A program made the translations under genes and the position numbers. This document shows, one piece after another, positions 48,836-64,000 of a stretch of 64,000 bases of DNA. The stretch spans positions 248,001-312,000 of IMG/VR virus record IMGVR_UViG_3300040801_002079, one strand, 5' to 3'. The notes beneath the pieces are model-generated. The model saw only the letters and a program-made list of their open reading frames with translations. It did no database searches and was not told the DNA's origin. The stretch's first letter is position 1. Every line of letters starts with the position of its first letter.

Positions 48836-50209
48836 ATGGAAAACACCATATTCGTGCAAATTGCAAGTTACAAAGACCCCGAACTAATACCCACCTTAAA
48901 TGATTTAATTGAAAACGCGAAATATCCTGAGAATATCCATGTAGGAATCTCATGGCAACATGATGATAATGAGTCCCTAGAAGATTTCATGGACGCAGGA
49001 TTTGATGTACTGGGCTTCAAAGAGGACTTTTCTGACATTGAAGATTATCAGAAGATTACAGCGTTTGTTAATATGTCCAAGGGTGGAACCAAGCTCTCTG
49101 TTTTAGATATTGATTATATGAATACTAACGGGGCTTGCTGGGCAAGACATAAAATTCAGCAAATGTATTCCGGTGAAAAGTATACTTTGCAGCTTGATTC
49201 ACATCATCGCTTTGTAGAAGGTTGGGATGAATTGGCTGTAAATATGCTTGAGAGTCTACGTTCTGATGAATGTCCCAAGCCTTTATTGACCGCATATATA
49301 CCATCTTTTGATCCTGAAAATGATCCAGCATCAAGAATTCATGTACCATGGAAAATGGATTTTGATAGATTCATTCCAGAAGGTGCTGTATTTTTCAGAC
49401 CATCATCCATAGATGATTGGGAAGAAAGAGATCGGCCCATGCCTGCACGTTTTTTCTCCGCGCACTTTACATTTGCTGACGGGAAGTTTGCTGAAGAGGT
49501 CCAGCATGATCCCAATTATTTTTTCCATGGAGAGGAAATATCATTAGCTGTAAGGGCGTTTACGCATGGGTACGATCTCTTTCATCCTCATCGTGTTATT
49601 GCATGGCATGAGTACACCCGAAAGGGACGAACCAAAGTATGGGATGATCACACTACCCCTGAAAAAAATAAGGGTAAAGTCGAGCTTGACTGGGTTGAGA
49701 GAAACAATCTATGCCATAAGCGAAACCGAATATTGTTTGGAATGGATGGAGAAGACCCGAATCAAATTGATTTTGGAAAGTATGGTTTCGGCAATGTTAG
49801 AACTTTACGAGAGTATGAAGAATATGCTGGTATCAGTTTTGAACACAGAGGAGTCCAGCAGGAAACTCTTGATAAAATGGAACCACCGAACAATCTTCCG
49901 TATGAAACAGAAGAAGAATGGAAAGACACATTCTGTCGATCAAATGACGTAAGAATTTTATTCCACCGAGATGAATTGGGTGAGATAAAGGATGATTACG
50001 ATTTCTTCTATGTCGGCGCACACGATGAAGACTATGACGAAATTTATCGGGAAGATTTAACTGAGGCCAAAATCAAGCAATACCTGCAAAACGAATGGTT
50101 TGATTTTAGACTAATATTTTTAGCAAATCGTATACCTAAAACTTTCACTGTTTGGCCTCACAGCAAATCTGATGGATGGGGTGAACGTATTGTAAAAGAT
50201 GTGGAGTAA
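48836..50209 (+). CDS. GT60-family (Gnt1/Gnt2-like) polypeptide N-acetylglucosaminyltransferase
   Basis: IFVQIASYKDPEL, GACWARH, LQLDSHHRF..GWD, FHGEEISLAVRAFTHGYDLFHP, WHEY.R: GT60/PF11397 motifs. Confidence 0.85.
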   Translation: MENTIFVQIASYKDPELIPTLNDLIENAKYPENIHVGISWQHDDNESLEDFMDAGFDVLGFKEDFSDIEDYQKITAFVNMSKGGTKLSVLDIDYMNTNGACWARHKIQQMYSGEKYTLQLDSHHRFVEGWDELAVNMLESLRSDECPKPLLTAYIPSFDPENDPASRIHVPWKMDFDRFIPEGAVFFRPSSIDDWEERDRPMPARFFSAHFTFADGKFAEEVQHDPNYFFHGEEISLAVRAFTHGYDLFHPHRVIAWHEYTRKGRTKVWDDHTTPEKNKGKVELDWVERNNLCHKRNRILFGMDGEDPNQIDFGKYGFGNVRTLREYEEYAGISFEHRGVQQETLDKMEPPNNLPYETEEEWKDTFCRSNDVRILFHRDELGEIKDDYDFFYVGAHDEDYDEIYREDLTEAKIKQYLQNEWFDFRLIFLANRIPKTFTVWPHSKSDGWGERIVKDVE

Positions 50210-50212
50210 ATT

Positions 50213-52525
50213 ATGTCTGACGGTATTATTTTATCAGCATATGGCTCCCATAATGCTACAATCTCCATGTACCACAACGGTGAATACCACGTTGTAGAAT
50301 TAGAGCGGTGGTTAAATAAGAAGAACTCCGGGTTAGCAGGGTATCTTCCAGCAAAGTATCCACAAAAGGTATTTGATGATGTTATGGAATACCTGTTCGA
50401 AAGAGCAGGTACCCGTAAAGTCGATCTTTTCCTATCCAATTATTTCACTAAGATTGATTTCACTGGATACGATATAAAGGAATTCAGAAGATTTGATCAT
50501 CACCAGTCTCACGCCGCTGGAGCATATTATCAGTCTGATTTTGAAAAGTCTTTAATTTTCACCTATGATGGTGGAGGAAACGGATCATTCTTTAACGTAT
50601 ATATTTCTGAAAGTAGAGATACCGGCCCAAAATTGATTGATAGGTTCGATCTTGATCTGGGCTTCCCTTACATGGTTCTAGCCGACCACTTATCTGATAT
50701 CAGAAAAGAACCTCTAAACATTGGAAATTTGGTTTATGCTGGAAAGTTAATGGGGCTTTGTGCTTATGGTACCGTTCGAGATGAATGGATGCCCCACTTC
50801 ATGAATTTCTATAAAAGGTTCCGGTATGGCGGAGATGCATTTAAGGGCGGTGCTGAAGTGCGAATTTCAGCAACAAACGAACTGTTCAGTGCAATAGGTG
50901 TTAATGATGTTGATTTCGAACTGGAAACCACGCGGTTTGACGGCGAATTTTCATGGGATATTGCGGCAACGTCACAGGCAGCGTTCGAGGAAGTATTCCT
51001 TGAATTAGCAATGCCTTACATTAACAAGTATAGCCCGGAAGAATATCCCATATGCCTTTCAGGTGGATGCGCTCTTAATGTTCTACTCAATGCCCGATTA
51101 TTAAAGATGGTGGGTAAAAACAATATTTTTGTGCCACCAAATACAAATGATTGCGGCATAGCCGTTGGTGGATTGCTAGATTACATAAAGCCGCGTGAAG
51201 TTGTGGATTTGACGTATTCTGGATTGCCCATAATGGACGAAAGAGAGTACACTGCACTAATAGAAGATAATCCTGTAAAGGCTATAGATGAAATCACCTT
51301 AGATGACTTATCAACCCTACTAGCTGAGAATTATATTGTAGGAGTGGTCAGGGGAAATTCTGAGCATGGTCCTAGAGCGCTGGGTAATCGTAGTATATTG
51401 TGTAATCCAGTGGGTGACATGAAGGATGTCCTTAATAAGAAGGTGAAAGACCGTGAATGGTATCGCCCATTTGCCCCACTGGTAAGATATGAGGATGTAT
51501 CCACATATTTTGATTTCGATTCAGAAAGTCGCCACATGACGTTTGTTGCAGATGTTAGGGATACTGAGAAGTTTCCTGCCATCACGCACGTTGACGGCAC
51601 CGGACGGTTGCAGACAGTTACCCGCGAACAAAATGAGTTCATATATGATTTAATAACACAGTTTAAAGAAAAGGCTGGGCATGGTGTTATTCTCAATACA
51701 TCCTTTAATGTTAACGGTAAACCAATTCTTACCAGACTAAGTGATGCCTTTAAGATTTTAATGGATACCGAATTGGATTGTGTATATTATGATGGAAAAA
51801 TAATTTTCAAAAGTAATAGAGAAAATGAATTTAATAATCTTTTAAGGTATGAGCCGGTGTCCATGGATCACACAAACTTCACCGTGTATGTTGACGCTTT
51901 TACAAACAGTGAAGATGAATTCAAAGCACTTCTGCCAAAGTTGGATGAGCTTCAGATGCGCTATAAAAAATTAATGATAGTTCTTAATGAACGTCATATG
52001 CATTTATTTACAGTTAAATCAGATGCCACTATAATACCCAGAGGGCAGAGGCAAATGTTTTATAGGGACATGATTGGTGGCGCAGGCTTTCCAAATAAAG
52101 AAGTTGATTTCATTAAGCCTCTGTGGTTTAAGGACATAATTGAAAACAACGCTTTGCAGTCAGATTATCACATTGTTGTCGATTTAACCTTTGAAAAATC
52201 CTTTGAAAATTTCAAAGAGTTTATGACTAAATATATGGGCGAAGCAGATGTCGCAAATAGTATCATTACTGACACTGAAGACTTTTCAACAATAACAGTG
52301 AAAGAGTTCTTATCTAAGCGCAGTAATTACGTAGAAACCAATGATAGATATCCTAGATTCGGGTTATATGCCGGATATTCAGAACTAATGTCTTGGTTTT
52401 TAAGAACATACGAAGGAAACCTACGCTACCATATGCTAAATGGGCGAGGAGAATCCAGTAGAGACTATTTAGCGATTCAATATTTAGAAAACGAAGGTAA
52501 ATTTTTAATTTTGGAACAACAATGA
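50213..52525 (+). CDS. O-carbamoyltransferase (CmcH/NodU family) with extra C-terminal domain
   Basis: SHNA, ELER, HHQSHAA, DGGG, GKLMGL, SGGCALNV, NDCG, EHGPRALGNRS, REWYRPFAP, HVDGTGRLQTV, LNTSFN. Confidence 0.93.
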   Translation: MSDGIILSAYGSHNATISMYHNGEYHVVELERWLNKKNSGLAGYLPAKYPQKVFDDVMEYLFERAGTRKVDLFLSNYFTKIDFTGYDIKEFRRFDHHQSHAAGAYYQSDFEKSLIFTYDGGGNGSFFNVYISESRDTGPKLIDRFDLDLGFPYMVLADHLSDIRKEPLNIGNLVYAGKLMGLCAYGTVRDEWMPHFMNFYKRFRYGGDAFKGGAEVRISATNELFSAIGVNDVDFELETTRFDGEFSWDIAATSQAAFEEVFLELAMPYINKYSPEEYPICLSGGCALNVLLNARLLKMVGKNNIFVPPNTNDCGIAVGGLLDYIKPREVVDLTYSGLPIMDEREYTALIEDNPVKAIDEITLDDLSTLLAENYIVGVVRGNSEHGPRALGNRSILCNPVGDMKDVLNKKVKDREWYRPFAPLVRYEDVSTYFDFDSESRHMTFVADVRDTEKFPAITHVDGTGRLQTVTREQNEFIYDLITQFKEKAGHGVILNTSFNVNGKPILTRLSDAFKILMDTELDCVYYDGKIIFKSNRENEFNNLLRYEPVSMDHTNFTVYVDAFTNSEDEFKALLPKLDELQMRYKKLMIVLNERHMHLFTVKSDATIIPRGQRQMFYRDMIGGAGFPNKEVDFIKPLWFKDIIENNALQSDYHIVVDLTFEKSFENFKEFMTKYMGEADVANSIITDTEDFSTITVKEFLSKRSNYVETNDRYPRFGLYAGYSELMSWFLRTYEGNLRYHMLNGRGESSRDYLAIQYLENEGKFLILEQQ

Positions 52526-53415
52526 GTGCACATTTTGTAACTTGCATATATAATGGATTAAATCAAAGTGAACTGTGTGGCAGGCTAAATCGTGAACGCC
52601 CGTATAAGTATTCACTTTCAACCATAGCAAAAACCAATAATAAGATTATATGTTATACTTCCCCGGATGAACTGAGTGGAATGCGATCAGATTTTCCAAG
52701 GGAGCGGTTTCCTAATATCGAATTACTCCCATGGAGCCTATATGCAATGACATTCCATAAGCGGGTAAATTCTGTACGCAACAAGGACGCACATATATAC
52801 AGGGAGTCCCCAGACTGGAGAGATCGCTGTGTTGAAATTATGTGGGGCAAATTCTTATTCATAAAAGATTCAATTGTAAACAATCAAGAATCTGAATATG
52901 TATACTGGATTGATGCGGGCATTTCACATCCGGGAATAATTCATAGCAGGTTTAACCCACACTATGATCATAATATTGGGTTTGTTCGGGATTTGGATAA
53001 ATCAACCTACCCCACCACATTTAAAAACGACTTGATATTTGACGAACAGTTTATGGATAGCCTGATTAACTATACGGGTCCCGATAAGATATTGAACGTT
53101 GCTGCAAAGGGGCCACAGCATCCCAGATTAAGCTACGATAATAAATTCATTGGTTCAGTTATAGGTGGAATCTTTGGTGGTCACAGGGATTTAATGGAAA
53201 AATATTGCAATGAGGTTACAGCGCAGTTTGAAGAATATCTTTATAATAAGGAACAACTGTGCAAAGAAGAGCAGATTATGACCGAGATACTTTCAGAAGG
53301 AACTCTACCAATTAAGACATTCATATTTGATACATGGTACCATCCTGACTGGGAAGATCGATATAATGAGTCTCAGGTTAGTTTTTGCGACTTCTTTGAT
53401 GAGATTAGAAAATGA
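52522..53415 (+). CDS. HtrL/YibB-like glycosyltransferase
   Basis: HFVTCIY, IMWGKFLF, YVYWIDAG, IGGIFGG, KEEQIMT. Confidence 0.7.
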   Translation: MSAHFVTCIYNGLNQSELCGRLNRERPYKYSLSTIAKTNNKIICYTSPDELSGMRSDFPRERFPNIELLPWSLYAMTFHKRVNSVRNKDAHIYRESPDWRDRCVEIMWGKFLFIKDSIVNNQESEYVYWIDAGISHPGIIHSRFNPHYDHNIGFVRDLDKSTYPTTFKNDLIFDEQFMDSLINYTGPDKILNVAAKGPQHPRLSYDNKFIGSVIGGIFGGHRDLMEKYCNEVTAQFEEYLYNKEQLCKEEQIMTEILSEGTLPIKTFIFDTWYHPDWEDRYNESQVSFCDFFDEIRK

Positions 53416-55067
53416 AAAATCAACTAACATTAGTTACAGCATTATTTGACTTGGGCAGAGAGCATCTACCCGAGGGGTTCAGTAGGGGGTTTGATCATTA
53501 TCTGGAATGTTTTGAAAAGCTCTTACAGGTCGATTACCCGATGGTTATATTTGTTGATAAGGAATTAAATGATTGGGTAAATGAACGTAGACAGGGTAAA
53601 CAAACACATATTGTAAATAAATCAAGAGAAGATTTAGAGTCATTTCCTTTTTACACTGAAGTTCAAGAAATAAGAACAAGCCAAGACTGGATCAACAGGG
53701 CTGGGTGGATTCCAGATAGCCCGCAAGCTAAGCTCCCATTATATAATCCCGTTGTAATGAGTAAGCAGTTCTTTATGAATGATGCAACACTTATGAATAT
53801 TTTTAATACGAAATATTTCATGTGGATCGATGCTGGCATATCGAATACCATAGGTGATCCAAAGGGATACATTGATGAAGAATTTGGTGATAAGATATCC
53901 AAAGTATTCAGTAACAACAAGATGCATTATCTTTGCTTCCCCTATGAGCCTGCTGCTGAAGTTCATGGATTTGAAAAAGACGCAATGTTTCGCTATGCGG
54001 GACAGGAAACAAAACATGTAGCAAGAGGCGGTATATTCGGTGGCAGCATAGATGCTATTAACATAATAAACGAATCATATTATGCTGAGTTGTCAGAGAC
54101 TATACGATCAGGGTATATGGGAACAGAGGAGAGTATATTCACGATTCTCACATACAAGCACAAGCATCTATGCACTTGTCATATGATTGAGTCTGATGGA
54201 CTCGTGTATAGATTTTTGGAAAAGATAAAGAACATGAAAAAGGATTCATATAACTCATTATTGGCAGTATATGTATTAACCTTTAATTTACCTAAACAAT
54301 TTGCATTATGGGCTGAAAAATTTGAGAAGAACTTAGAAAATAATCTTAGGGATGAAACAGTACGCTATGTAATAAACAACTCCACTGACCCTAGCGTGGA
54401 AGCCGAATACAGCGAACTGTTTAAAAAGTATGGGTTTGAAGAACTTAAGTTTGATAATATTGGGATATGTGGAGCTAGACAGGTAGCAGCAGAACATTTC
54501 GAAGAAAATAATCACAAGTATATGATTTTCTTTGAAGATGATATGTTACTATGTGGATCAGAGGATGAAGGAAAATATTGTAAAAATGGATTCAGAAAAT
54601 ATTTTCCAGATATTATTAGCAAATCTATGTCGATAATGGAAAGTGAATCATTGGACTATTTCAAGCTTTGCTTCTCAGAATTTTACGGTGATAACCATGA
54701 TAACTGGGCATGGTACAATGTCCCACAGGAAAAAAAGGACAAGTGGTTTTTAACAAATAAAAACTCAAGTGACCCAAAGAAGGTTAGAATTCATTACACC
54801 AGTGCATTTAGAGGGGTACCATATGCTGTGGGCGAGTACCACTATTGCAATTGGCCCCTGCTATTTAACAGAGAAGGCAACAGAAAGATATTTCTGGATA
54901 CCAAGTTTGAACATAAGTTTGAACAAACATGGATGAGTTTTGTAATGGAACTTATTGTGGATAAAAAAATTAAACCCGGATGTTTGTTGGGCAGTGCCAT
55001 AACACATCATAGGGAGTTTCACTATAGTAAAGAAATTAGGCGAGAAAATGAACACTACACCAATTAA
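53412..55067 (+). CDS. HtrL/YibB-like glycosyltransferase fused to a GT-A (GT2-like) domain
   Basis: TLVTALFDLGR, YNPVVMSK.F, YFMWIDAG, RGGIFGG, GTEESIF; second half NIGICGAR, FFEDDM. Confidence 0.78.
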   Translation: MKNQLTLVTALFDLGREHLPEGFSRGFDHYLECFEKLLQVDYPMVIFVDKELNDWVNERRQGKQTHIVNKSREDLESFPFYTEVQEIRTSQDWINRAGWIPDSPQAKLPLYNPVVMSKQFFMNDATLMNIFNTKYFMWIDAGISNTIGDPKGYIDEEFGDKISKVFSNNKMHYLCFPYEPAAEVHGFEKDAMFRYAGQETKHVARGGIFGGSIDAINIINESYYAELSETIRSGYMGTEESIFTILTYKHKHLCTCHMIESDGLVYRFLEKIKNMKKDSYNSLLAVYVLTFNLPKQFALWAEKFEKNLENNLRDETVRYVINNSTDPSVEAEYSELFKKYGFEELKFDNIGICGARQVAAEHFEENNHKYMIFFEDDMLLCGSEDEGKYCKNGFRKYFPDIISKSMSIMESESLDYFKLCFSEFYGDNHDNWAWYNVPQEKKDKWFLTNKNSSDPKKVRIHYTSAFRGVPYAVGEYHYCNWPLLFNREGNRKIFLDTKFEHKFEQTWMSFVMELIVDKKIKPGCLLGSAITHHREFHYSKEIRRENEHYTN

Positions 55068-55623
55068 AAAGTATTTTATTATCAGTCTTCCCCGGACGGG
55101 AACAAAAAGCTTATGTAACATGGCTCACACGCTTGGGTTTAAATTTAAGCATGTTCCATCAGTTACGCTGCCTCGCCTACTCAATGAAAACGAAATACAG
55201 GTATTTGCTGATACGCCAATATTTACCCCCTCAACATTCACCGAACTTTGCAATAATGAAAATCATTATTTTATCTACATAAAGCGAGACATGGAAAGCT
55301 GGGTTGATTCTCTGGAGCGGGTTAATTTACATAATAACTATATGGCTCTCCATACAGGAAAAGTGCCAGAGAATTGTATGAACAAAATGGACCGGGAATG
55401 TCTAGAAGAGCTATTTAATAATCAAGATTATTCCACTGAGCTAGCTAAAGAGCGGTACAGATGGCACTATAATAAAGTGACTCACATTATTCCAGAGGAC
55501 AGGCTTCTTGTGTATAGCTTCGATATGGGATGGGAACCTCTAGCTGCGTTCATGGAAAAAGAGCCTCCCGTGGCAGATGTGCCACAAATCAACAAAAACA
55601 CAATGTTTGATCCTATTGTTTAG
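55048..55623 (+). CDS. Sulfotransferase-family P-loop protein
   Basis: SLPRTGTKSL (5'-PSB loop), DTP, RD.ESWVDS (3'-PB), PEDRLLV, GWEPL..F. Confidence 0.8.
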   Translation: MNTTPIKKYFIISLPRTGTKSLCNMAHTLGFKFKHVPSVTLPRLLNENEIQVFADTPIFTPSTFTELCNNENHYFIYIKRDMESWVDSLERVNLHNNYMALHTGKVPENCMNKMDRECLEELFNNQDYSTELAKERYRWHYNKVTHIIPEDRLLVYSFDMGWEPLAAFMEKEPPVADVPQINKNTMFDPIV

Positions 55624-56792
55624 ATTACACTAACATCAGAATCTGATGTGTTGCAAACAGATATAGTAAGTGTGTAAGTGATACTGATAGCCACATCCTT
55701 TGCTTTAGGAATTGGAGTAAAGATGATATGTGTCAGCAAACGCTCCCTTTCATTTTCGGGTATAATAGGATCATTTGCAACACCGGCAACCTGACCTGTT
55801 ATACTAGATACATTGCAATTCGCACAAACCCCATCAGTAACAATGTTACCAAAGTCGGCAGGAGCGCTGTCATTACATCCTATAACTACGGAAGAATTCG
55901 CGCCAGTGTCTTTACTCTGGAATGTGAGTAGCCCGTAAGATTGCTTACCAATAATGGTTGGATATGTCCCCCCGGAGTTATCTGTAATGAATACATATAC
56001 AAATTCATTAATGGGGTCTCCTCCTGAAAGCCAACTGCCGGTATTAATGCCTTCACAAATATCACCATAGGTAATCTGTCCTGTCGGTCCAGTGCCCGCA
56101 GATGGCGTTAAAAGTGTTGCACTATAAGACAAGCCATCTACTGTTAAATCTATCGTTAGGGTTGAGTTCAGGGGCACGGAAGATACATCGGAAGCCACCT
56201 TATCATTCACAAATATACTAGCATACCCCGGAGAAGAAACAGCGGGTAAGCCGGGACTATAAAGCCCAATTTCATCAAATGTGAAATCTTCGTCCCCTGT
56301 TGGTGAAAGAATGGACAAATCCTGACCATTCGGTTCATTTTCATTCAGAAATACCTTTATAACAACGTTCGATTTAATACCTGCTTCCTGAGAAGTTACT
56401 CCCGCTCCAATCGGATCAGATAGGGGATCACTTCCACCCCCGGTTCTAACAGTATTGGGTCCAGCAGAGCCTGTATCGATGCCTAAATCGGTATTAGCTT
56501 CATCCACTACCTCAGAATAGGTTTCATTATATAGACGAGACTCCCATCCATCTATTCTGCCATCGTTTGGGGGGTTAAAGATTAAATTATCACCAACATC
56601 TTTAAAGGTTCCACCGTTGCCGAAAGCCATTCGGTGAATGATTGAGTTTGGCTCATTAGCTAAAGCTCGTGCCAAAATTCGTGACATATTTTGTGGGTGT
56701 ATCGCGTTTGACTTATCAACGAGAACTTTATTATTGGTTTCATCACGAATAAGAACATTCGTTTCTATTTGTACATTCATACCGTCTTTCAT
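55620..56792 (-). CDS. Virion structural protein (baseplate/tail-collar-like)
   Basis: NAIHPQNMS..LA.AL, MAFGNGG, FDEIGLYS, LLTHIIF.PI.K; two TATAAATA upstream (56811, 56827). Confidence 0.65.
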   Translation of the reverse strand: MKDGMNVQIETNVLIRDETNNKVLVDKSNAIHPQNMSRILARALANEPNSIIHRMAFGNGGTFKDVGDNLIFNPPNDGRIDGWESRLYNETYSEVVDEANTDLGIDTGSAGPNTVRTGGGSDPLSDPIGAGVTSQEAGIKSNVVIKVFLNENEPNGQDLSILSPTGDEDFTFDEIGLYSPGLPAVSSPGYASIFVNDKVASDVSSVPLNSTLTIDLTVDGLSYSATLLTPSAGTGPTGQITYGDICEGINTGSWLSGGDPINEFVYVFITDNSGGTYPTIIGKQSYGLLTFQSKDTGANSSVVIGCNDSAPADFGNIVTDGVCANCNVSSITGQVAGVANDPIIPENERERLLTHIIFTPIPKAKDVAISITYTLTISVCNTSDSDVSVI

Positions 56793-56897
56793 TAAAGGCT
56801 CCTGAAATAATATTTATACCTAACTGTATTTATATAAAAAGATGCAGTGCGTAAATTCAGCTATAAATATATAAAAGAGTAATTTAAGGAGACTTTT

Positions 56898-57047
56898 ATG
56901 TTTTTTTCATTTATGCTAGGCGCATTAGTTATGTTGGTTTTTGGTGTATTCGCACCCAATACATTTACCAAAATGACCGGAATGGTTCGTTCACTTTGGG
57001 ATAAAGTTAAAGAAGAAGAACAAACGGACGATTTCTCGGGAAAATAG
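56898..57047 (+). CDS. 49-aa single-TM membrane protein (below ORF-track cutoff)
   Basis: TATAAATA 56862, TAAGGAGA RBS, MFFSFMLGALVMLVFGVFAPNTFTKMTGMVRSLWDKVKEEEQTDDFSGK*. Confidence 0.8.
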   Translation: MFFSFMLGALVMLVFGVFAPNTFTKMTGMVRSLWDKVKEEEQTDDFSGK

Positions 57048-57128
57048 AACGGGGCAATGATTTGCTTGCGGGGCTGTGTCCCGACAACGAAGATGAGTGT
57101 ATTGAGCGCTTAAAGCAACATTGCCCCG
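57038..57128 (+). other. Candidate -1 ribosomal frameshift signal
   Basis: G GGA AAA in frame just before TAG; 5 nt later stem CGGGGCAATG (57050-57059) / CATTGCCCCG (57119-57128). Confidence 0.72.
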
Positions 57129-57232
57129 ATTTAGATGAAAAATGTCTTGCAAGTTTATCCCAGATGGACTACTATCTTGTGGGAAGGGAAAACTATAATT
57201 TAACCCCTGAACAAACAGATAACAAGTCTTAA
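57044..57232 (+). CDS. -1 frame extension (62 codons) of the 49-aa membrane protein
   Basis: IERGNDLLAGLCPDNEDECIERLKQHCPDLDEKCLASLSQMDYYLVGRENYNLTPEQTDNKS*; fills the gap to the thyA RBS; no own RBS/start. Confidence 0.62.
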   Translation: MERGNDLLAGLCPDNEDECIERLKQHCPDLDEKCLASLSQMDYYLVGRENYNLTPEQTDNKS

Positions 57233-57245
57233 CTGGGAGAAAACT

Positions 57246-58112
57246 ATGACAATAAACCCGTTTGATGCTGAGTATCACCGACTCGGCAATAAAATCTTAT
57301 CAGATGGATTCTGGAAAGAAAATAAAAGAACCGGCACTAAATGTTTAACACTTCACGGCGAATCATGCACCTATGACCTTTCTACTGGATTTTTTCCAGC
57401 GCTAACCACAAAAAAATTATTCTTTAATGCCATGATTGGTGAATTATTGGGATTCATTCGTGCAGTTGATAATGCGGCTGACTTTAGGGCACTTGGGTGT
57501 CCCTTTTGGGATGCTAATGCTAATGAAACAGAGGCATGGCTCAATAACCCCAATAGAAAGGGAGAAGATGATCTAGGTCGAATCTACGGCGTTCAAGGCA
57601 GACATTGGATAAACCGACATGGCGAAGAGATAGATCAACTAAAACAGATCATCGATAAGCTCTCAATTGGTATAGATGATAGAAGATTAATTATGAATTA
57701 TTGGAATCCGGGAGAAATAAATGAACAGGCATTGCCCCCGTGCCACGATTTTTACCAATTCCATTTAAGGGGTACAACATTAGACCTATCTATGTATCAA
57801 AGATCAAACGATGTACCACTTGGTACACCAATGAATATAGCTAGCTCATCTTTGCTATTAATGTTGGTCGCCAGAATAACGGGCCATTTTCCCGGAAAGT
57901 TCACTCATATGATGGGGGATGTTCATATCTATGATAATCAAGTGGATTTATTTAAAGAGCAGATGTCTCGCGCACCATATTTTCCACCTAAGATGTGGAT
58001 AAGCCAAGATATAAAGTCATTGGAAGACTTGGAAACATGGGTGACATTTAATGATTTTACAATTGAGGAATACGAGCATCACCCAGTTATAAAGTTCCCG
58101 TTTGCTGCTTAA
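57246..58112 (+). CDS. thyA: Thymidylate synthase
   Basis: RTGT, LTTKK, DLGRIYGVQ, RRL, ALPPCH, YQRSND..LG.P.NIAS (dUMP-specifying Asn), GDVHIY.N. Confidence 0.96.
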   Translation: MTINPFDAEYHRLGNKILSDGFWKENKRTGTKCLTLHGESCTYDLSTGFFPALTTKKLFFNAMIGELLGFIRAVDNAADFRALGCPFWDANANETEAWLNNPNRKGEDDLGRIYGVQGRHWINRHGEEIDQLKQIIDKLSIGIDDRRLIMNYWNPGEINEQALPPCHDFYQFHLRGTTLDLSMYQRSNDVPLGTPMNIASSSLLLMLVARITGHFPGKFTHMMGDVHIYDNQVDLFKEQMSRAPYFPPKMWISQDIKSLEDLETWVTFNDFTIEEYEHHPVIKFPFAA

Positions 58113-58912
58113 GCCGTTATAGGTGGTGGCTCAAAATTAAAAGCAAATGCATGTAATGATTTTGCTGTATCGAAATGGACCGTAGCCTCATTTTCAGTTA
58201 TGTAATCAATTCCTGTTGGGGTTATTAATGTAGGCGGGCTAGTGGATGGATCGATACAATATATTACACAAAACTGAGTGCCAAGATTGTGTGGAATTGA
58301 ATGTGACACACTCTTAGTGTAATTTGTGTAAGTGTAATGTGTTTTCTTTGAAACAAGGTTATCGTTATTATCAAAGAAAACCATATTACCTCTTGTGGTG
58401 TCGGTAATATCAAATCCATTAAGGTTGTCAAATGTTAAATTAAATGTGCTACCCTCAAGAATTTGCTCAATATCAAACAATAATAGATCACCAGATAGAT
58501 ATCCAATAACGGACATATCATTAGCATTGGAGAAATTTGACATATCTATATCGGATAATTTGATGCTGGAAACATTAGCCACAATGTTTGCTAACTGATC
58601 AACAACATCAAATAAGCTATCATTTCCAGTTAGCCCACTTATTCCGGGAAGGTCATTAAATGGTACAGGATTAAAGGTTAAATCTTCGTTTAGCCAATTG
58701 GACCCCAGAGATGCTTTTAGGTTGGGGTCTTCTGAAACAGTGGTATTAAGGGCGACAAGCTTTTCACCGTCATTAAATCTTAAAACCTTATCGCTTATAC
58801 TAAATGTAAACTCGCCCGCATTCTCCGCATTAAATGAGGGGGCAGATGGGATTGAATCAATCACCAAGTTTACAATTTTACCGCCTTCTAATTTTACACC
58901 ACCAATTCTCAT
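58109..58912 (-). CDS. Probable tail fibre-associated structural protein
   Basis: TATAAATA at 58937-58944; C-terminal HSIPHNLG motif common in fibre proteins. Confidence 0.5.
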   Translation of the reverse strand: MRIGGVKLEGGKIVNLVIDSIPSAPSFNAENAGEFTFSISDKVLRFNDGEKLVALNTTVSEDPNLKASLGSNWLNEDLTFNPVPFNDLPGISGLTGNDSLFDVVDQLANIVANVSSIKLSDIDMSNFSNANDMSVIGYLSGDLLLFDIEQILEGSTFNLTFDNLNGFDITDTTRGNMVFFDNNDNLVSKKTHYTYTNYTKSVSHSIPHNLGTQFCVIYCIDPSTSPPTLITPTGIDYITENEATVHFDTAKSLHAFAFNFEPPPITA

Positions 58913-58945: not shown

Positions 58946-61900
58946 TTATCGCGGAGCTAAACCGGTAATTGTTATGGTATCAATACCGTAATCGTTATTC
59001 CATATTGTTCCCGTGGTTCCCAACGTAACCTTTATTCTTACGCGAGTATTAACATGGTTAGCAGAACTCAAATCAACATTTCTGTAAGACCATATTTGTG
59101 CTCCGCCTGTGACAACCTTATCCGGATCGGACGGACCACCAAATTCTGGGCCAACATCAACCCATCCAGCGCCACCCTCATTTAGTTGAACCTGACAGGT
59201 TGCATTGTTATCATTACCGCGTTGGTTGGTATAGAACTCAATATAAAAATCACTGTATTGTGTGCTGTCCAGTGTTGTATTAAATTCCATAAAGAATTCA
59301 TCACCGCCCACTGTGGGGCTTGATGATTCTGTGTATACATATCCTTCTGGGCTTCCACCCTGACCCGATGTTGGCCCCACACCACTTGAAGCCGTATCGT
59401 TACTATCCCATTTCCACCGCCTATTTGCTCCTCCCGGAGTTGCTGTTGTTCCAAGTGGGTCTGTCCATGTAAATTCGGTAACATCACCCGTAGTCGATGA
59501 TGGGAATGAATATGGTCCATATACATCCTCAACTGGTGGACCAACAAGGGAATCATAATTTGTAATAGTTAATTCATCGTGATCACTGTTAACTATATGG
59601 AAAATTGGCGTAACTTTGGAATCGTAATCCGTTATTGTAATGGTATCATGATCTGATAAAATATCCACCGGATCAGCAGGAGTTCTATACAACATTATGG
59701 TATTACACTCATCAGCCAAGGCTGGTCCACTCCAATCATAATCCATACCAAATGTTGAATCATCATGGTTCCATCCACCCAATTGCGCCAAATGAATAAT
59801 TTTATAATATTGAGGAATATTAACTTGGCTAGTTGAATATTGATAATTTCTATCATATGTTTCATTTAGGGCTTTATCATGATACACCACTTCTGTAATA
59901 TAACCATTCAATAGTCCTCCATTAGGATCGGTTCCGATATATTTTAACCTAAAGTCGGCCTCTGGCTCCCCTGATGACGGATTAAGTGCAAATCGGAAAG
60001 ACGTATACCCGCTAGTTACATATTTGTTCCTATCAGCATCCACGCCATCTATGAATAGCGATATTATTCCATCTCCTTCATGCATGACCGTAATATTGAA
60101 CCACCTATAATATCCCATCGTTATATCAATGCCCGGAGATGTAAAATTGGTGTAAGTAATATCATTAGTTTCAAACTTGGTTCTTATTCCAAATGTTACA
60201 TCCTGTCCTATGCCATCACCTTCTGCATACACCTCAAATTCATCTCCACCATCTCCAAATTCGGAACTAAAGATTGGATGCTTCATACTTAGATCAAAAG
60301 TATTGGGACGTAGGTAGACCATTGCACTAAGTGTGAACTCTTCTGTTATTGTTCTGGTTATGGGATTAGTTAGAGTTATACTTCCGTTGGACCCAAAGCA
60401 CCCGAGCGATCCAACTTTGTGGAATCCAAAGTCGAGACTATGCTTAGGCTTGCTTGTACCAGCAGCGATTAAATCATTTGACCCGATTTGATCTGAAATT
60501 ACATCATCGCTATCCATTCTCCAGTAATGCGTGGGATTATCATACTTAACTAAGTATGGGTAATCATATTCTCTGGAAGATACAGTTGTATCCCATCCGG
60601 TAAACCCAGTCGGCGGGGTATATTTGAACTCAGCAGCGTTTGTTCTGAATATAGTTCTAGTCTGTCGTGGGCCAACTCCTGTCCCACTATACTCACCTGT
60701 AACGATGTAAATGTAATCTGACATGTCAAGCGCTGAAACGTCCGTTAATGTGAATAATGGATCAGTTCCAGTGGAAGGATCACCCTGTATCCAGTTTCCA
60801 TTTATTGAAATCCACATGCCTCTATTATCAATATCAACAGCTATTCCAAGTGTTCCAGTAAGCGGGGCATCAGATGTTGGGGTTGATATGCCATTAGTAT
60901 ACAACTCCCCTCTGGAATCATACATGTAATGAAATTCTGATTCTCCCAAATAGGTTAATGAGTTTTCAACAGCCAGCAGTCCATATGGAAGTGTATAGTC
61001 TACATAAGATACACCAACCCGGAATCCCGGAGTTTCCACATCACTCTTAGCTATATTAAAGAACAACTCAGCGTAATGTTTCCCACTATTATGTCCTATA
61101 TGGGATGAATATTCATAATCTGGGGTCGTACTAACTTGTGCAAGCATTGCTTGTCGCGCATATCCTCTAAAATCATTGGGTGTAAAGTAATGAGTGTACG
61201 GACTTTGGGTATACACTGGAGTAGCGTAAGCCTGATTAATGTCGGTTACCCAATTTGCATAGCGTGGAGATTTGAATGTGTATTCGGGCTGCGATCCGGG
61301 AAGACCACAATCAAATCGATATAACATATGGGCATCAAAGTTGTAGCCCTCATCAAAATCCATACTATATTTTGGAACATCATCTTCAATAAACCCAGAC
61401 CCAATTGTAAAGATGTATCTACCATCATCCGAAAGAACAAAGTTTGCACCAAACAGATCAGACATGTAACTTTGTATAGGCTCTATATATTTAATAAATT
61501 TATATTCTTGATCAGTATCATCCCAATCAAAAATATCTAGTTTACCGTGGGTTCCGCTTTGCGTGAAATTCTGAAACATCTGAGATGTTACTATCCTATT
61601 TCCATCCCTCGACATCGCCACAAACGTATCATCACTTTCGTCTACATCAAATTCCAGAACTGGATGACTTATCCTGATCCGCTGTACGAATTCCCAATTT
61701 CCCGGAGTTGTTTCTTTAAACACAATTGCACCAGATGCAAAGTATGAGAATGTATCATCCCTAATAGTTTGTCTTGATGCATAATTGAGTACTATAGTTG
61801 ATCCATCTGATGATGCGCCACAATACGAAGTATTATTCCATGGGGTTTTTCCTATATATGTACCATTTGAGGTTTTATATGCGCCAAAATCATCATATAT

Positions 61901-64000
61901 GGTGCTCTTTAATAGCTCCGGATGAGTTAAATCAAGAGAACCTTCATATTCCCATGTCGTGTTACCCACATTATATTTCCAAACTCTTGGAGCTTGCACC
62001 TCAACATTATCATGCATATTGAAAGTTCCGCTTGTCATTATTATGCGAGACCCATCGGGGACAACATAAAAATGTTGCTCAACCGATTCAGTTGCATAAG
62101 ATGACATAGCATCTTCTACAACAAGCGCCTCATCTAGATTCCAAACACTTCCATTTTGACGGAATATTTCATTATCTGCGACTACAACTGAGCCGTCATC
62201 GGAACATGTGATGCCCCTAGCTCTACGATTGCTTGGCTTAACACTAAGCTCCATCTCATCAATTTTTAAATATGTGCCATCAAGCTGATCTTCATATACA
62301 TGGATTTTATGTGGCAGGGGAGAGAAAGTGGTTCCCAAGCTTTCGTATGTGAAAATATATTGACCATTATTTGACATAACTATAGGGCTTGACCCTAATG
62401 TATCGCCATAAAAATAGGTGGTCCAATTATCAGACACATCCTTTTTCATTACCAACAATTTTTCATACGAGTTTTCGTTTACATATGCAGCATATACTGA
62501 TCCCTCAGATGATATAGCAAACTCATCCCCATCAACCATGAAAGTTTGCCCTATATTTTGATCGCCCTCTGTAGACCACGGGGTTTGTACATCTAGTTGG
62601 AACATAATTCCTGAATAATAATTTGATGCTGTATATCCACCAGCCCCGTATATTTTTGTACCACTACTATTCCACGCAGATGGATTTATCCGAGAATATA
62701 ATTCTATGGCATCAGAAGCTTGTGATATCGTATCTATCTCCCACGGGGTTGATAGCGTGTATTGCATTACAATTCCACCTTCAGCCTCTCTAATGGTAAA
62801 TAATTTTGTACCATCCGGCGAGAAGCTTAGAGAGCTAAAATCGTCTGAAGTGTTTATATACTCTCCAAGGGTCCCACTAACATATGATTTTGAATCATAC
62901 GATATAGTCGATAGCTCCCACGGAGTGCTGAGGGTGTATTGATAAATTGTGTCATTTCCAATTCCCGCATAGTATAATTTTGTACCATCCGGCTTAATAT
63001 AAAATCCACCTGAACCAGAGCTTTGGGCTGTAAAATCATAAGTTACTGAATTGTACGTTGCTGTTCTTAAATCCCATGGTGTTGTAAGATCGTATTCATA
63101 TATATCAGCAGCAGTATCAAGTAAGTACATTTTATCGCCTGACGCACTTAACGAAATGTTAATAGCCGATCCACCTTCGGTGAAGAAGAAGCAACCATCA
63201 GTTAAAAACATGGTGCTAACATCACCCGGAGTTGTCAAATCCCCCTGAAGCAATGTATTTCGGGCATTATTATAGTAAACGGATGAGTCATATCCATCGT
63301 ATGTTACATATATTTTACTTTCATCAGATGATACCCCTGCAAAATCTTTAACTGTTAAAGATGATACAGTAGAGCTTGTGCTATCTAATGATATACCATT
63401 TATATCCCATGCGGGAGATATATTGTATTTAAGTAAACTATTTCCCTCAAATGTGTACAGTGTATCTCCGCTAGAGTTAATATCAAGGCCAAGATATGGA
63501 GTATTTCCTGATAAATTTGTATAGTTTCCTGTAAATGTTAATGTTCTAATGTCTCCCGGAGTCCCTGCTTCATATTGAAAAACTGCGCCCGAATCTCCTG
63601 ATATGAAAAAGCGGCTTTGATCATCATTCCAGTAAAATCCATTCAAATCATCTTCAAATGCTGAATGATCAAATACCTCAGCGCCCAAATCAAATGAGTC
63701 AAAAGACCATGCAGAACTTATATCATATTGTAATCCCCGATTAGAACCACCAAAGTAGTAACAATTTGATCCATCGGGGCTAAAATGAATAACTAGTGGG
63801 TAAATTGGGTTATCAGCAGAATAATCATATAGATCGGAATCTAATGTAGCTCCAGTTAAATCCCAAGGAGTTGGCAATGTATAACTGCGGAAATAATATC
63901 CATTGGTAGATTCTGCTAGATATAATTTAGTACCATCAGGTTTAAAGTAAAAAGAAGTGCTAAGCGCCGAGCTTATCGCTGAAACGTCAAGTGATACACT
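58946..64000 (-). CDS. Large multi-domain adhesin / tail fibre, 5' end beyond the right edge
   Basis: Frame stays open from 63877 to 64000 (SVSLDVSAISS...FKPDGTKLY...); propeller repeats F.PDGTKLY/Y.LSTPWD, SPRY-like, LamG-like and MAM-like segments. Confidence 0.8.
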   Translation of the reverse strand, partial: SVSLDVSAISSALSTSFYFKPDGTKLYLAESTNGYYFRSYTLPTPWDLTGATLDSDLYDYSADNPIYPLVIHFSPDGSNCYYFGGSNRGLQYDISSAWSFDSFDLGAEVFDHSAFEDDLNGFYWNDDQSRFFISGDSGAVFQYEAGTPGDIRTLTFTGNYTNLSGNTPYLGLDINSSGDTLYTFEGNSLLKYNISPAWDINGISLDSTSSTVSSLTVKDFAGVSSDESKIYVTYDGYDSSVYYNNARNTLLQGDLTTPGDVSTMFLTDGCFFFTEGGSAINISLSASGDKMYLLDTAADIYEYDLTTPWDLRTATYNSVTYDFTAQSSGSGGFYIKPDGTKLYYAGIGNDTIYQYTLSTPWELSTISYDSKSYVSGTLGEYINTSDDFSSLSFSPDGTKLFTIREAEGGIVMQYTLSTPWEIDTISQASDAIELYSRINPSAWNSSGTKIYGAGGYTASNYYSGIMFQLDVQTPWSTEGDQNIGQTFMVDGDEFAISSEGSVYAAYVNENSYEKLLVMKKDVSDNWTTYFYGDTLGSSPIVMSNNGQYIFTYESLGTTFSPLPHKIHVYEDQLDGTYLKIDEMELSVKPSNRRARGITCSDDGSVVVADNEIFRQNGSVWNLDEALVVEDAMSSYATESVEQHFYVVPDGSRIIMTSGTFNMHDNVEVQAPRVWKYNVGNTTWEYEGSLDLTHPELLKSTIYDDFGAYKTSNGTYIGKTPWNNTSYCGASSDGSTIVLNYASRQTIRDDTFSYFASGAIVFKETTPGNWEFVQRIRISHPVLEFDVDESDDTFVAMSRDGNRIVTSQMFQNFTQSGTHGKLDIFDWDDTDQEYKFIKYIEPIQSYMSDLFGANFVLSDDGRYIFTIGSGFIEDDVPKYSMDFDEGYNFDAHMLYRFDCGLPGSQPEYTFKSPRYANWVTDINQAYATPVYTQSPYTHYFTPNDFRGYARQAMLAQVSTTPDYEYSSHIGHNSGKHYAELFFNIAKSDVETPGFRVGVSYVDYTLPYGLLAVENSLTYLGESEFHYMYDSRGELYTNGISTPTSDAPLTGTLGIAVDIDNRGMWISINGNWIQGDPSTGTDPLFTLTDVSALDMSDYIYIVTGEYSGTGVGPRQTRTIFRTNAAEFKYTPPTGFTGWDTTVSSREYDYPYLVKYDNPTHYWRMDSDDVISDQIGSNDLIAAGTSKPKHSLDFGFHKVGSLGCFGSNGSITLTNPITRTITEEFTLSAMVYLRPNTFDLSMKHPIFSSEFGDGGDEFEVYAEGDGIGQDVTFGIRTKFETNDITYTNFTSPGIDITMGYYRWFNITVMHEGDGIISLFIDGVDADRNKYVTSGYTSFRFALNPSSGEPEADFRLKYIGTDPNGGLLNGYITEVVYHDKALNETYDRNYQYSTSQVNIPQYYKIIHLAQLGGWNHDDSTFGMDYDWSGPALADECNTIMLYRTPADPVDILSDHDTITITDYDSKVTPIFHIVNSDHDELTITNYDSLVGPPVEDVYGPYSFPSSTTGDVTEFTWTDPLGTTATPGGANRRWKWDSNDTASSGVGPTSGQGGSPEGYVYTESSSPTVGGDEFFMEFNTTLDSTQYSDFYIEFYTNQRGNDNNATCQVQLNEGGAGWVDVGPEFGGPSDPDKVVTGGAQIWSYRNVDLSSANHVNTRVRIKVTLGTTGTIWNNDYGIDTITITGLAPR

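What the first reader, a model, noticed from the sequence alone, without database searches (positions are those of the whole stretch)
56862..57232. Hidden late membrane gene with a textbook -1 frameshift giving 49-aa and 111-aa products
Seen: late promoter, strong RBS, 49-codon TM protein ending TCG GGA AAA TAG. The heptamer G GGA AAA (57038-57044) fits X XXY YYZ in frame. Five nt later a 10-bp perfect stem (57050-57059/57119-57128, extended by TTGCT/AGCAA) encloses two small hairpins, like a three-way-junction stimulator. The -1 frame is closed upstream (TAA 57008), has no RBS or early ATG, and stays open 62 codons to the thyA RBS, encoding a duplicated motif LCPDNEDEC / HCPDLDEKC. Established: GGGAAAN heptamers drive -1 shifts in lambda G/GT-type genes. 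Inference: a fixed-ratio pair of membrane isoforms, the long one with a four-Cys (disulfide or metal) domain, possibly for lysis timing or superinfection exclusion. Phage frameshifts outside tail-chaperone and capsid/tail genes are uncommon.
Basis: partly seen in the sequence, partly recalled or inferred. Interest (0 to 1): 0.8.

Follow-up and report, generated by a model that had tools for sequence, protein, structure and literature searches.

The report
Conserved -1 frameshift in phage membrane gene
A small membrane-protein gene of an uncultured jumbo phage very probably uses a programmed backward ribosome slip to attach, in a fraction of molecules, a four-cysteine domain that other phages carry fused to thymidylate synthase; it is a new and well-supported example of recoding outside the usual phage tail and capsid genes.

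Summary

Comparative data support a programmed -1 frameshift.
- Eleven diverged lineages from independent metagenomes need the same -1 shift at the same Lys codon.
- Seven have a canonical heptamer of three kinds (G GGA AAA, C CCA AAA, T TTA AAA). The other four have A AAG.
- Ten have a 0-frame stop directly after the heptamer.
- Three have no start codon for the downstream domain.
- The linker is always a multiple of three in length.
- The stem shows compensatory changes.
- Four relatives encode the same protein as one unbroken ORF.
- One clade has its own ATG in a TAATG overlap, and there heptamer and stem are both absent.

Contigs from three runs of one sample show no indel.

Function is inferred. 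The Cys/QMDYYLVGRE domain has no known family. In distant relatives it is the N-terminus of ThyA, so a membrane-tethered ThyA partner is more likely than a lysis or exclusion role. No transframe protein has been observed.

The parts
56862..56869 (+). T4-type late-promoter-like motif TATAAATA
   Evidence: Read. An NATAAATA motif lies 31-39 nt (56 nt in L005) upstream of the ORF1 ATG in all 12 relatives that carry the transmembrane ORF. Promoter activity is inferred, not shown.
56886..56891 (+). Shine-Dalgarno AAGGAG, 6 nt before the ATG
   Evidence: GGAG-type sites occupy the same place in relatives.
56898..57047 (+). ORF1: 49-aa single-pass membrane protein, the 0-frame product. It has an N-terminal hydrophobic helix, an F-P-x-x-F motif, an R..W.K amphipathic stretch and an acidic tail, and ends GGA AAA TAG.
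   Evidence: Homologous ORF1s of 41-52 aa occur in all split relatives.
57038..57044 (+). Slippery heptamer G GGA AAA (X XXY YYZ in the ORF1 frame)
   Evidence: The homologous junctions are G GGA AAA in L005, L011 and L027, C CCA AAA in L017 and L022, T TTA AAA in L015, and A AAG in L006, L007, L023 and L028. In L005 and L015 the -1-frame stop lies directly 5' of the heptamer and the 0-frame stop directly 3', which confines the shift to the heptamer.
57045..57047 (+). 0-frame stop TAG directly after the heptamer ('shifty stop' position)
   Evidence: A stop (TAG, TAA or TGA) follows the Lys codon directly in 10 of 11 split lineages. In L011 it lies one codon later.
57050..57067 (+). 5' arm of the stimulator stem: core 57050-57059 CGGGGCAATG and extension 57062-57067 TTGCTT. 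It starts 5 nt after the heptamer.
   Evidence: The spacer is 4-7 nt in 10 of 11 split lineages.
57113..57128 (+). 3' arm of the stem: AAGCAA plus CATTGCCCCG. It lies on the codons of the conserved K-Q-H-C-P-D motif.
   Evidence: Covariation was tested. GC changes to AU at the third base of the Cys codon and GC to CG at the third base of the Pro codon, each matched in the 5' arm. 79% of cells are paired, against 34-47% when the partner is slid.
57044..57232 (+). -1 frame continuation: 62 codons IERGNDLLAG-LCPDNEDEC-IERLKQ-HCPDLDEKC-LASLSQMDYYLVGRENY..., with stop TAA at 57230-57232. Joined to ORF1 at the heptamer it gives the 111-aa product.
   Evidence: It is a conserved coding region: differences between the 11 lineages by codon position are 707/405/1294, and C19, C27, L30, L38 and QMDYYL.G are invariant across 16 sequences.
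57246..58112 (+). thyA (thymidylate synthase), 13 nt after the stop of the -1 ORF
   Evidence: Pfam PF00303, E = 2e-83. In L005 and L011 its ATG overlaps the end of the domain ORF. In L015, L018-L021, L024-L026, L002/L003 and P0015 the domain is in frame with ThyA.

Best explanation
This is a programmed -1 ribosomal frameshift cassette inside a small, probably late-transcribed, phage operon.

Ribosomes translate ORF1, an N-terminal membrane helix followed by a short cytoplasmic tail. Most terminate at TAG 57045 and release a 49-aa membrane protein. A fraction slips back one base on G GGA AAA, either as a tandem slip of the Gly and Lys tRNAs or as a P-site slip of tRNA-Lys on A AAA while the stop codon waits in the A site. 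The slip is helped by the adjacent stop and by a 10+6-bp stem that starts 5 nt downstream. Those ribosomes continue in the -1 frame for 62 codons and make a 111-aa protein: the same membrane anchor carrying a three-helix, four-Cys domain with the invariant QMDYYLVGRE motif on the cytoplasmic side.

What is shown: the sequence elements, their conservation and covariation in relatives, and the existence of natural single-ORF versions.

What is inferred:
- that shifting really occurs, and how efficiently;
- the N-out/C-in topology;
- the function.

Because the domain is the N-terminal extension of thymidylate synthase in distant relatives, and its ORF abuts thyA here, the most likely role is to dock or regulate ThyA (or its complex) at the inner membrane in a set ratio to the free anchor. 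Confidence is about 0.8 for the frameshift itself and about 0.3 for this functional reading.
For: 1. Same shift in relatives. The same -1 offset at the same Lys codon occurs in 11 lineages from independent samples and assemblers. Median nucleotide identity in the domain is 67%.

2. Heptamer pattern. It is kept while its letters change: GGG, CCC and TTT before A AAA, and A AAG in the rest. The background frequency is 1.55%. L027 (GGG) groups with L017 and L022 (CCC) on the tree.

3. Shift window. In L005 and L015 the overlap of the two frames is confined to the heptamer.

4. No independent start. L017 has no ATG, GTG or TTG in the -1 frame before the domain. L022 and L023 have one only inside it. 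The window and L011 have only a TTG.

5. Linker. It is 33 nt in 9 of 11 lineages, and 30 or 39 nt in the others, always a multiple of three. The peptide pattern [IV]-x-x-[GD]-N-x-x-L is kept upstream of any start, and the two other frames are closed.

6. Stem. It lies 4-7 nt after the heptamer, with duplex energy of -15 to -25 kcal/mol (z about -3 to -6) in 10 of 11 lineages. Compensatory changes sit at synonymous sites of the HCP codons. RNAalifold finds this stem on its own.

7. Natural controls. Four single-ORF orthologues are colinear with the predicted product (P0004, P0006, P0009, P0011). In the TAATG two-gene clade (L029, L030, L032), heptamer, adjacent Lys-stop and stem are all absent.

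8. No indel in contigs of three runs.

9. Published efficiencies. X_XXA_AAG and A_AAG are the best -1 motifs in E. coli, and G_GGA_AAA and A_AAA are usable with a stimulator (PMC4066793).

10. ThyA link. The domain is fused in frame to ThyA in at least five other lineages.
Against: - No protein, ribosome-profiling or reporter data exist. The host is unknown, and G_GGA_AAA is a weak motif in E. coli (PMC4066793).
- The window has a possible independent start: TTG at 57062 with GGGG 7 nt upstream. Several relatives have a GTG overlapping the stop (L005, L006, L007, L028) or an ATG in the linker (L007, L015, L027), so reinitiation could contribute there.
- The two-gene clade shows the domain can work unfused.
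- The link between stem and frameshift is imperfect. AT-rich L015 has almost no stem (-3.7 to -6 kcal/mol), and the single-ORF L010 keeps a complementary segment (-17 kcal/mol).
- The stem closes a loop of about 60 nt, which is longer than in classical stimulators.
- The read evidence is low depth (3-5x), consists of contigs only, and probably comes from the sample the window was assembled from.
- The functional model rests on gene fusion and adjacency only. The two-gene clade has no thyA at the locus.
Confidence: 0.78

Rival explanations
1. These are two separate genes joined by termination-reinitiation coupling. Ribosomes finish ORF1 at TAG, melt the stem that otherwise hides the downstream start, and restart at TTG 57062 (GTG or ATG in relatives). 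This would yield a free 56-aa Cys domain and no fusion protein.
For: - TTG 57062 has GGGG 7 nt upstream and lies within the stem.
- GTG overlaps the stop in L005, L006, L007 and L028, and an ATG lies in the linker of L007, L015 and L027.
- The L029/L030/L032 clade really is a two-gene TAATG arrangement with its own ATG.
- Free-standing domain proteins exist (P0012, P0013, P0021-P0025).
Against: - L017 has no start codon at all before the domain. L022 and L023 have one only inside it, and L011 only at the residue before the first Cys.
- The model does not explain why the four bases before the Lys codon form X XXA in 7 of 11 lineages with three different X.
- It does not explain why linker indels are multiples of three, or why the linker peptide is conserved upstream of the starts.
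- It does not explain why single-ORF orthologues are colinear with the shifted product.
- Where a true ATG exists (the TAATG clade), the stem is absent. This is the opposite of what a start-masking role predicts.
Confidence: 0.12
2. This is a sequencing or assembly indel in the GGGAAAA run, or a recent inactivating frameshift mutation (pseudogene) of a single 110-codon gene.
For: Homopolymer runs are typical sites of indel errors. Single-ORF orthologues exist. Depth in the available runs is only 3-5x.
Against: - The same frame break is present in 11 diverged lineages from different samples, platforms and assemblers.
- Contigs of three runs agree with the window, with no gap.
- The downstream frame is under purifying selection: differences by codon position are 707/405/1294, and a dozen residues are invariant.
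- The 0-frame stop is kept directly after the site in 10 of 11 lineages.
Confidence: 0.02
3. The conserved stem is not a frameshift stimulator. It would instead be a leader or processing element that controls thyA expression or mRNA stability, with the heptamer shifting only at background level.
For: - The 3' arm lies in an invariant coding motif.
- The single-ORF L010 keeps a complementary segment, and L015 lacks the stem.
- thyA follows directly.
- Some thymidylate synthases are known to bind their own mRNA (general knowledge, not tested here).
Against: - The stem ends more than 100 nt before the thyA ribosome-binding site.
- Its 5' edge sits 4-7 nt after the heptamer in 10 of 11 lineages, which is the spacing expected for -1 stimulators.
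- It is absent in L008, L009, L029 and L032, which have no heptamer, although L008 and L009 still have thyA downstream.
- The heptamer statistics are independent of the stem.
Confidence: 0.06

Closest known systems
Phage lambda G/GT tail-assembly-chaperone frameshift (G GGA AAG)
   Same: The heptamer is nearly identical. The -1 shift occurs near the end of a short upstream ORF, giving a C-terminally extended minor product in a fixed ratio. The frameshift is conserved in relatives whose sequences have diverged. (General knowledge, and PMC10885494.)
   Different: There is no sequence or positional relation: the gene does not lie between tail tube and tape measure, and it matches no PHROG or Pfam family. 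The product is a membrane protein, not a chaperone. Here a stop follows the heptamer directly and a covarying stem follows. As far as I recall, lambda has no downstream stimulatory structure.
IS911 / IS3-family transposase frameshift (A AAA AAG plus downstream structure; in IS911 a three-way junction, Rettberg et al. 1999 as cited in PMC4066793)
   Same: Both have a -1 slip on an A AAR Lys codon close to the upstream ORF's stop, stimulated by a structure a few nt downstream. The window's own fold is a three-way junction. A fusion protein is made alongside the short product.
   Different: This is not a transposase or a mobile element. Only the closing stem is conserved here; the inner hairpins are not. 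An upstream SD-like element is present in 9 of 11 relatives but not in the window.
E. coli copA / CopA(Z) and dnaX tau/gamma frameshifts
   Same: These are bacterial -1 frameshifts on C CCA AAG or A AAA AAG with a downstream RNA structure. They produce two products that share an N-terminus. C CCA AAA is the heptamer in L017 and L022. (General knowledge.)
   Different: In those cases the shift truncates the protein, because the -1 frame stops soon. Here it extends a 49-aa protein by 62 residues. There is no homology.
Alphavirus 6K/TF frameshift, stimulated by co-translational membrane insertion of an upstream transmembrane segment (bioRxiv 10.1101/790444; PMC8682741)
   Same: Both combine a small membrane protein, a slip site some tens of codons after a transmembrane helix, a downstream stem-loop, and two membrane isoforms. 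Here the helix ends about 20-30 residues before the slip site in all lineages (ORF1 is 41-52 aa).
   Different: That is a eukaryotic translocon system in an RNA virus. No force effect has been tested here, so the resemblance is only a lead.
Translationally coupled small-gene pairs (ATGA or TAATG overlaps)
   Same: The related clade L029/L030/L032 uses exactly this arrangement for the same two proteins.
   Different: The window has no start codon at the stop, and has a heptamer and stem instead.

Membership tests
-1 programmed ribosomal frameshift cassette | Slippery motif X XXY YYZ (or Z ZZN) in the upstream frame, within the overlap of the two ORFs | tested here: met
   G GGA AAA lies at 57038-57044 in the ORF1 frame. 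The overlap runs from 57011 to 57047.
-1 programmed ribosomal frameshift cassette | Conservation of the motif and of the frame relation in diverged homologues | tested here: met
   There are 11 split lineages: 7 with canonical heptamers of 3 kinds and 4 with A AAG. P is about 7e-11 against a 1.55% background.
-1 programmed ribosomal frameshift cassette | Stimulatory RNA structure 5-9 nt downstream, supported by covariation | tested here: met
   The stem is 57050-59/57119-28 with an extension; z = -5.1. The spacer is 4-7 nt and changes are compensatory. It is weak or absent in L015.
-1 programmed ribosomal frameshift cassette | The downstream ORF cannot be expressed on its own (no start or RBS) | tested here: inconclusive
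   This is true for L017, L022 and L023. The window has TTG 57062 with GGGG 7 nt upstream, and some relatives have GTG or ATG.
-1 programmed ribosomal frameshift cassette | Orthologues that encode the transframe product as one ORF | tested here: met
   P0004 (103 aa), P0006 (98 aa), P0009 (97 aa) and P0011 (104 aa) do so.
-1 programmed ribosomal frameshift cassette | Transframe protein detected, with efficiency above background | not testable with these tools
   Only DNA runs hold the sequence. There are no proteomic or ribosome-profiling data.
Lambda-type tail assembly chaperone G/GT | Homology to the chaperone family and position between the tail tube and tape measure genes | tested here: not met
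   No PHROG, Pfam or NCBIfam hit. The neighbours are a 390-aa protein of unknown function (phrog_11259) and thyA.
Holin/antiholin or superinfection-exclusion membrane protein | Homology to a known holin, antiholin or exclusion family, or adjacency to an endolysin or spanin | tested here: not met
   No family hit in Pfam, PHROGs or NCBIfam. No lysis gene lies among the neighbours from 53 to 64 kb.
Translationally coupled two-gene pair | Start codon of gene 2 overlapping or abutting the stop of gene 1 | tested here: not met
   The window reads AAA TAG AAC with no ATG, GTG or TTG until 57062. The feature is met in L029, L030 and L032 (TAATG).
Thymidylate synthase N-terminal accessory domain (unnamed family defined here) | The C-x6-C ... 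C-x6-C ... QMDYYLVG(R/K)E signature | tested here: met
   Alignment A3 of 16 sequences has C19, C27 and QMDYYL.G invariant. The HMM search finds only 14 clusters in 1.84 billion representatives, including the ThyA fusion P0015.

The most novel reading that the evidence does not exclude
The frameshift may be a dosing device that converts a set fraction of a small inner-membrane anchor into a docking site for thymidylate synthase, so that part of the phage's dTMP synthesis is tethered to the membrane late in infection. The shift may in addition be tuned by the pulling force of the N-terminal helix as it inserts into the membrane while the ribosome sits on the heptamer. That would be the first bacterial or phage counterpart of the alphavirus 6K/TF mechanism.
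Probability: 0.12. Interest if true: 0.85.

Novelty: new member of a known kind. Interest (0 to 1): 0.62.

Why it matters
Almost all annotated phage frameshifts are in tail-assembly chaperones: 2397 of 2476 in the SEA-PHAGES set (PMC10885494). This case would add a recoding event in a small non-structural membrane protein.

It comes with an unusually complete natural experiment. The same two-part protein exists as a single ORF, as a frameshift pair, and as a coupled gene pair. The heptamer, the adjacent stop and the stem appear together and are lost together.

It defines an unannotated four-Cys domain tied to thymidylate synthase by repeated gene fusion, which suggests an unknown layer of organisation or regulation of phage nucleotide synthesis.

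It also shows gene callers mis-starting the downstream ORF at GTG, TTG or ATG codons (P0001-P0003, P0007), so such cassettes are probably under-counted in metagenomes.

Tried and rejected
- Cultured phages. megablast of 56000-58200 and tblastn of both pieces against 50,697 phage records found nothing. tblastn of two ThyA-fused versions of the domain found nothing either, so no cultured phage carries it.
- Genomes. The genome-contig scan found no relative.
- Families. Pfam, PHROGs, NCBIfam, PDB sequence search, ESM Atlas and Foldseek gave no credible family for either piece.
- Structure. The AF2 model of the domain has only moderate confidence (pLDDT 65, three helices).
- XacN1, the nearest isolate by the 390-aa neighbour, has a different gene order at the locus and no thyA there.
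- Three-way junction. It was rejected as a conserved feature, because RNAalifold keeps only the closing stem.
- Transcriptional slippage. I consider it unlikely because the A run is only 4 nt (general knowledge). It could not be tested, since no RNA run is shown to hold the sequence.
- Tree. The tree of the concatenated pieces is poorly resolved (9 of 15 inner branches open), so the direction and number of changes between fused and frameshift forms cannot be stated.
- L009 (25-nt overlap, ATG inside ACA AAA TGG) could not be assigned to either mechanism.

Full report
**1. What is in the window**

The window is part of IMG/VR contig UViG_3300040801_002079, 316.8 kb. It is an uncultured jumbo myovirus-like phage. 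By the neighbouring 390-aa protein, its nearest isolates are Xanthomonas phage XacN1, Stenotrophomonas phage CM1 and Xoo-sp13, at 53-57% identity.

- TATAAATA lies at 56862-56869.
- AAGGAG lies at 56886-56891.
- ORF1 (56898-57047) encodes a 49-aa protein. Its first 19 residues are strongly hydrophobic, with basic residues only after the helix.
- The last codons are TCG GGA AAA TAG, so G GGA AAA (57038-57044) is a canonical heptamer in frame.
- The -1 frame is closed at 57008-57010 and then open to TAA at 57230-57232.
- The only candidate start in that frame is TTG at 57062.
- CGGGGCAATG (57050-57059) and CATTGCCCCG (57119-57128) are perfect complements.
- The 89-nt fold has -38.3 kcal/mol and z = -5.1.
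- thyA starts at 57246 (Pfam PF00303).

**2. Not an error**

Logan contigs of three runs of one microbial-mat sample cover 57038-57047 with no difference and no gap. Depth is low and the sample is probably the source of the contig, so this is weak evidence on its own. The relatives settle the matter.

**3. Relatives**

Protein searches with the -1 piece found a small family that occurs only in metagenomes. DNA was fetched for most members. All the close relatives share the gene order: a 390-aa gene on the other strand, then the small gene or genes, then usually thyA. Four architectures occur.

(a) Split, needing a -1 shift: 11 lineages.

| Lineage | Junction |
|---|---|
| window | TCG GGA AAA TAG |
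| L005 | GAG GGA AAA TAG |
| L027 | GAG GGA AAA TAA |
| L011-L013 | GAG GGA AAA TCG TAA |
| L017 | GAC CCA AAA TAA |
| L022 | AGC CCA AAA TAA |
| L015/L016 | GAT TTA AAA TAA |
| L006 | TCG GAA AAG TGA |
| L007 | ACG GAA AAG TAG |
| L023 | GTA AAG TAG |
| L028 | GCA AAG TGA |

(b) A single ORF of 97-104 aa, colinear with the predicted shifted product: P0004/L008, P0006/L010, P0009 and P0011.

(c) Two genes with a TAATG stop-start overlap and their own ATG: L029, L030 and L032, with P0021-P0025 as further proteins of that clade.

(d) No membrane part, with the domain fused in frame to the N-terminus of ThyA: L002/L003, L018-L021, L024-L026 and P0015.

L009, with a 25-nt overlap and an ATG inside ACA AAA TGG, is ambiguous.

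**4. Evidence that the shift is programmed**

- Heptamer. The Lys codon is always the shift point, and the four bases before it form X XXA in 7 of 11 lineages with X = G, C or T. In long ORFs of the same phages this happens at 1.55% of Lys codons. That gives P of about 7e-11, or about 4e-6 if only the three heptamer kinds count as independent. The other four lineages have A AAG, which is the most shift-prone tetramer in E. coli (PMC4066793).
- Shift window. In L005 and L015 the -1 frame opens directly at the heptamer and the 0 frame closes directly after it, so the shift can only happen there.
- Adjacent stop. A 0-frame stop follows the Lys codon directly in 10 of 11 lineages, as TAG, TAA or TGA. 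This requires the rare Ile codon ATA, or GTA/GTG, in the -1 frame.
- Starts. L017 has no possible start before the domain. L022 and L023 have one only inside it.
- Linker. The segment between the heptamer and the first Cys is 33 nt in nine lineages, and 30 or 39 nt in the other two. It keeps a peptide pattern, and the other two frames are closed.
- Coding. The downstream frame is clearly coding. Differences by codon position are 707/405/1294 at a median 67% nucleotide identity.

**5. The stem**

The 5' arm lies in the linker. The 3' arm lies on the codons of the conserved x-C-P motif.
- Keyed to those codons, the pairs change GC to AU at the third base of the Cys codon and GC to CG at the third base of the Pro codon. 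In L027, where H-C-P is A-C-P, the 5' arm changes to match.
- On the MAFFT alignment, 79% of cells pair, against 34-47% when the partner is slid. None of 500 shuffles reaches the covariation score.
- RNAalifold predicts exactly this 9-bp stem and nothing else. The two inner hairpins of the window are therefore not a conserved three-way junction.
- The spacer is 4-7 nt in 10 of 11 lineages.
- Duplex energies are -15 to -25 kcal/mol in the split lineages, except AT-rich L015.
- There is no significant duplex in L008, L009, L029 and L032. Single-ORF L010 keeps a complementary segment.

The heptamer, the adjacent stop and the stem thus occur together and are missing together, with two imperfect cases.

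**6. Mechanism proposed**

Most ribosomes terminate at TAG and make the 49-aa anchor. A fraction shifts -1 on G GGA AAA and makes the 111-aa anchor-plus-domain protein, with the junction ...FSGK/IERGND.... Efficiency is unknown. G GGA AAA is a modest motif in E. coli, and the host here is unknown. Reinitiation at TTG 57062 may add some free domain and cannot be excluded for the window.

**7. Function (inferred)**

- Neither piece matches any family or solved structure.
- The AF2 model of the domain is a three-helix unit. The two C-P-x5-C motifs lie at helix starts, and pLDDT is 65. Four Cys on the predicted cytoplasmic side suggest a metal site rather than disulfides.
- The domain is covalently fused to ThyA in several distant lineages. 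Its ORF abuts or overlaps thyA in the close ones. In L015 the -1 frame runs on into thyA without a stop.
- This points to an interaction with thymidylate synthase. The frameshift product would place that interaction at the membrane.
- Against a strict dependence on thyA, the two-gene clade has no thyA at the locus.
- Nothing supports a lysis or exclusion role.

**8. Promoter context**

NATAAATA lies 31-39 nt (56 nt in L005) before ORF1 in all relatives that carry the membrane ORF. The ThyA-fusion relatives instead have TTGACA...TATAAT-like sequences. This is consistent with late expression of the membrane form, but it is not tested.

**9. Verdict**

Direct proof of the transframe protein is still missing.

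Noticed in passing
L018-L021, L024-L026, L002/L003 (for example L018:1480-2484); protein P0015: In more distant relatives the Cys/QMDYYLVG domain has no membrane ORF in front of it. It is instead the in-frame N-terminal extension of thymidylate synthase (335-371 aa ORFs). These genes are preceded by TTGACA...TATAAT-like sequences rather than TATAAATA.
   Followed up: partly
L015:1483-2532 (also L016): In this AT-rich relative the -1 frame runs from the T TTA AAA heptamer through the Cys domain and on into thyA without a stop (349 codons). A shift there would give a membrane-anchored ThyA. An in-frame ATG at 1495 could also give a soluble Cys-ThyA.
   Followed up: partly
L029:384-694, L030, L032:2364-2677: A sister clade encodes the same two proteins as separate genes with a TAATG stop-start overlap. 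It has QMDYF instead of QMDYY and LCDE instead of LCPD. No thyA follows; a 262-266-aa gene on the other strand comes next.
   Followed up: partly
window 56811-56818 and 56827-56834 (minus strand): There are two reverse-complement copies of TATAAATA, 19 and 35 nt upstream of the divergent 390-aa gene (55620-56792, phrog_11259, called a structural protein in phages 7t3 and CBB). The 105-nt intergenic region therefore looks like a pair of divergent late promoters.
   Followed up: no
A4 columns 1-16; for example L011:2949-2964, L017:1479-1494, L022:189-204: An SD-like GGAG/GAGG lies about 11-17 nt upstream of the heptamer in 9 of 11 split relatives, recalling the dnaX upstream stimulator. It is absent in the window and in L007. 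It may simply reflect the Glu/Gly-rich tail.
   Followed up: no
window 48836-55623: Just upstream lies a run of sugar-modification genes: a glycosyltransferase (phrog_24687), a Nol-like carbamoyltransferase (phrog_1601), a 551-aa HtrL_YibB-family protein and a 191-aa sulfotransferase_4-family protein. The Pfam labels come from relatives' gene tables. The cluster is conserved in L008, L011 and L032.
   Followed up: no
window 56995-57032 (runs X1 and X3): A second contig type in the same sample matches these 38 nt with 5 differences. Its flanks are unrelated: AAGGAGAATAATTATGT before and AAATATGAAG... after. It is possibly another small gene sharing the WDKVKEEE-type tail.
   Followed up: no
window 58946-63877 (minus strand): A 1643-aa ORF with a TTG start in the mechanical ORF list. 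It is repeat-rich and probably a fibre or other virion protein. It was not examined.
   Followed up: no
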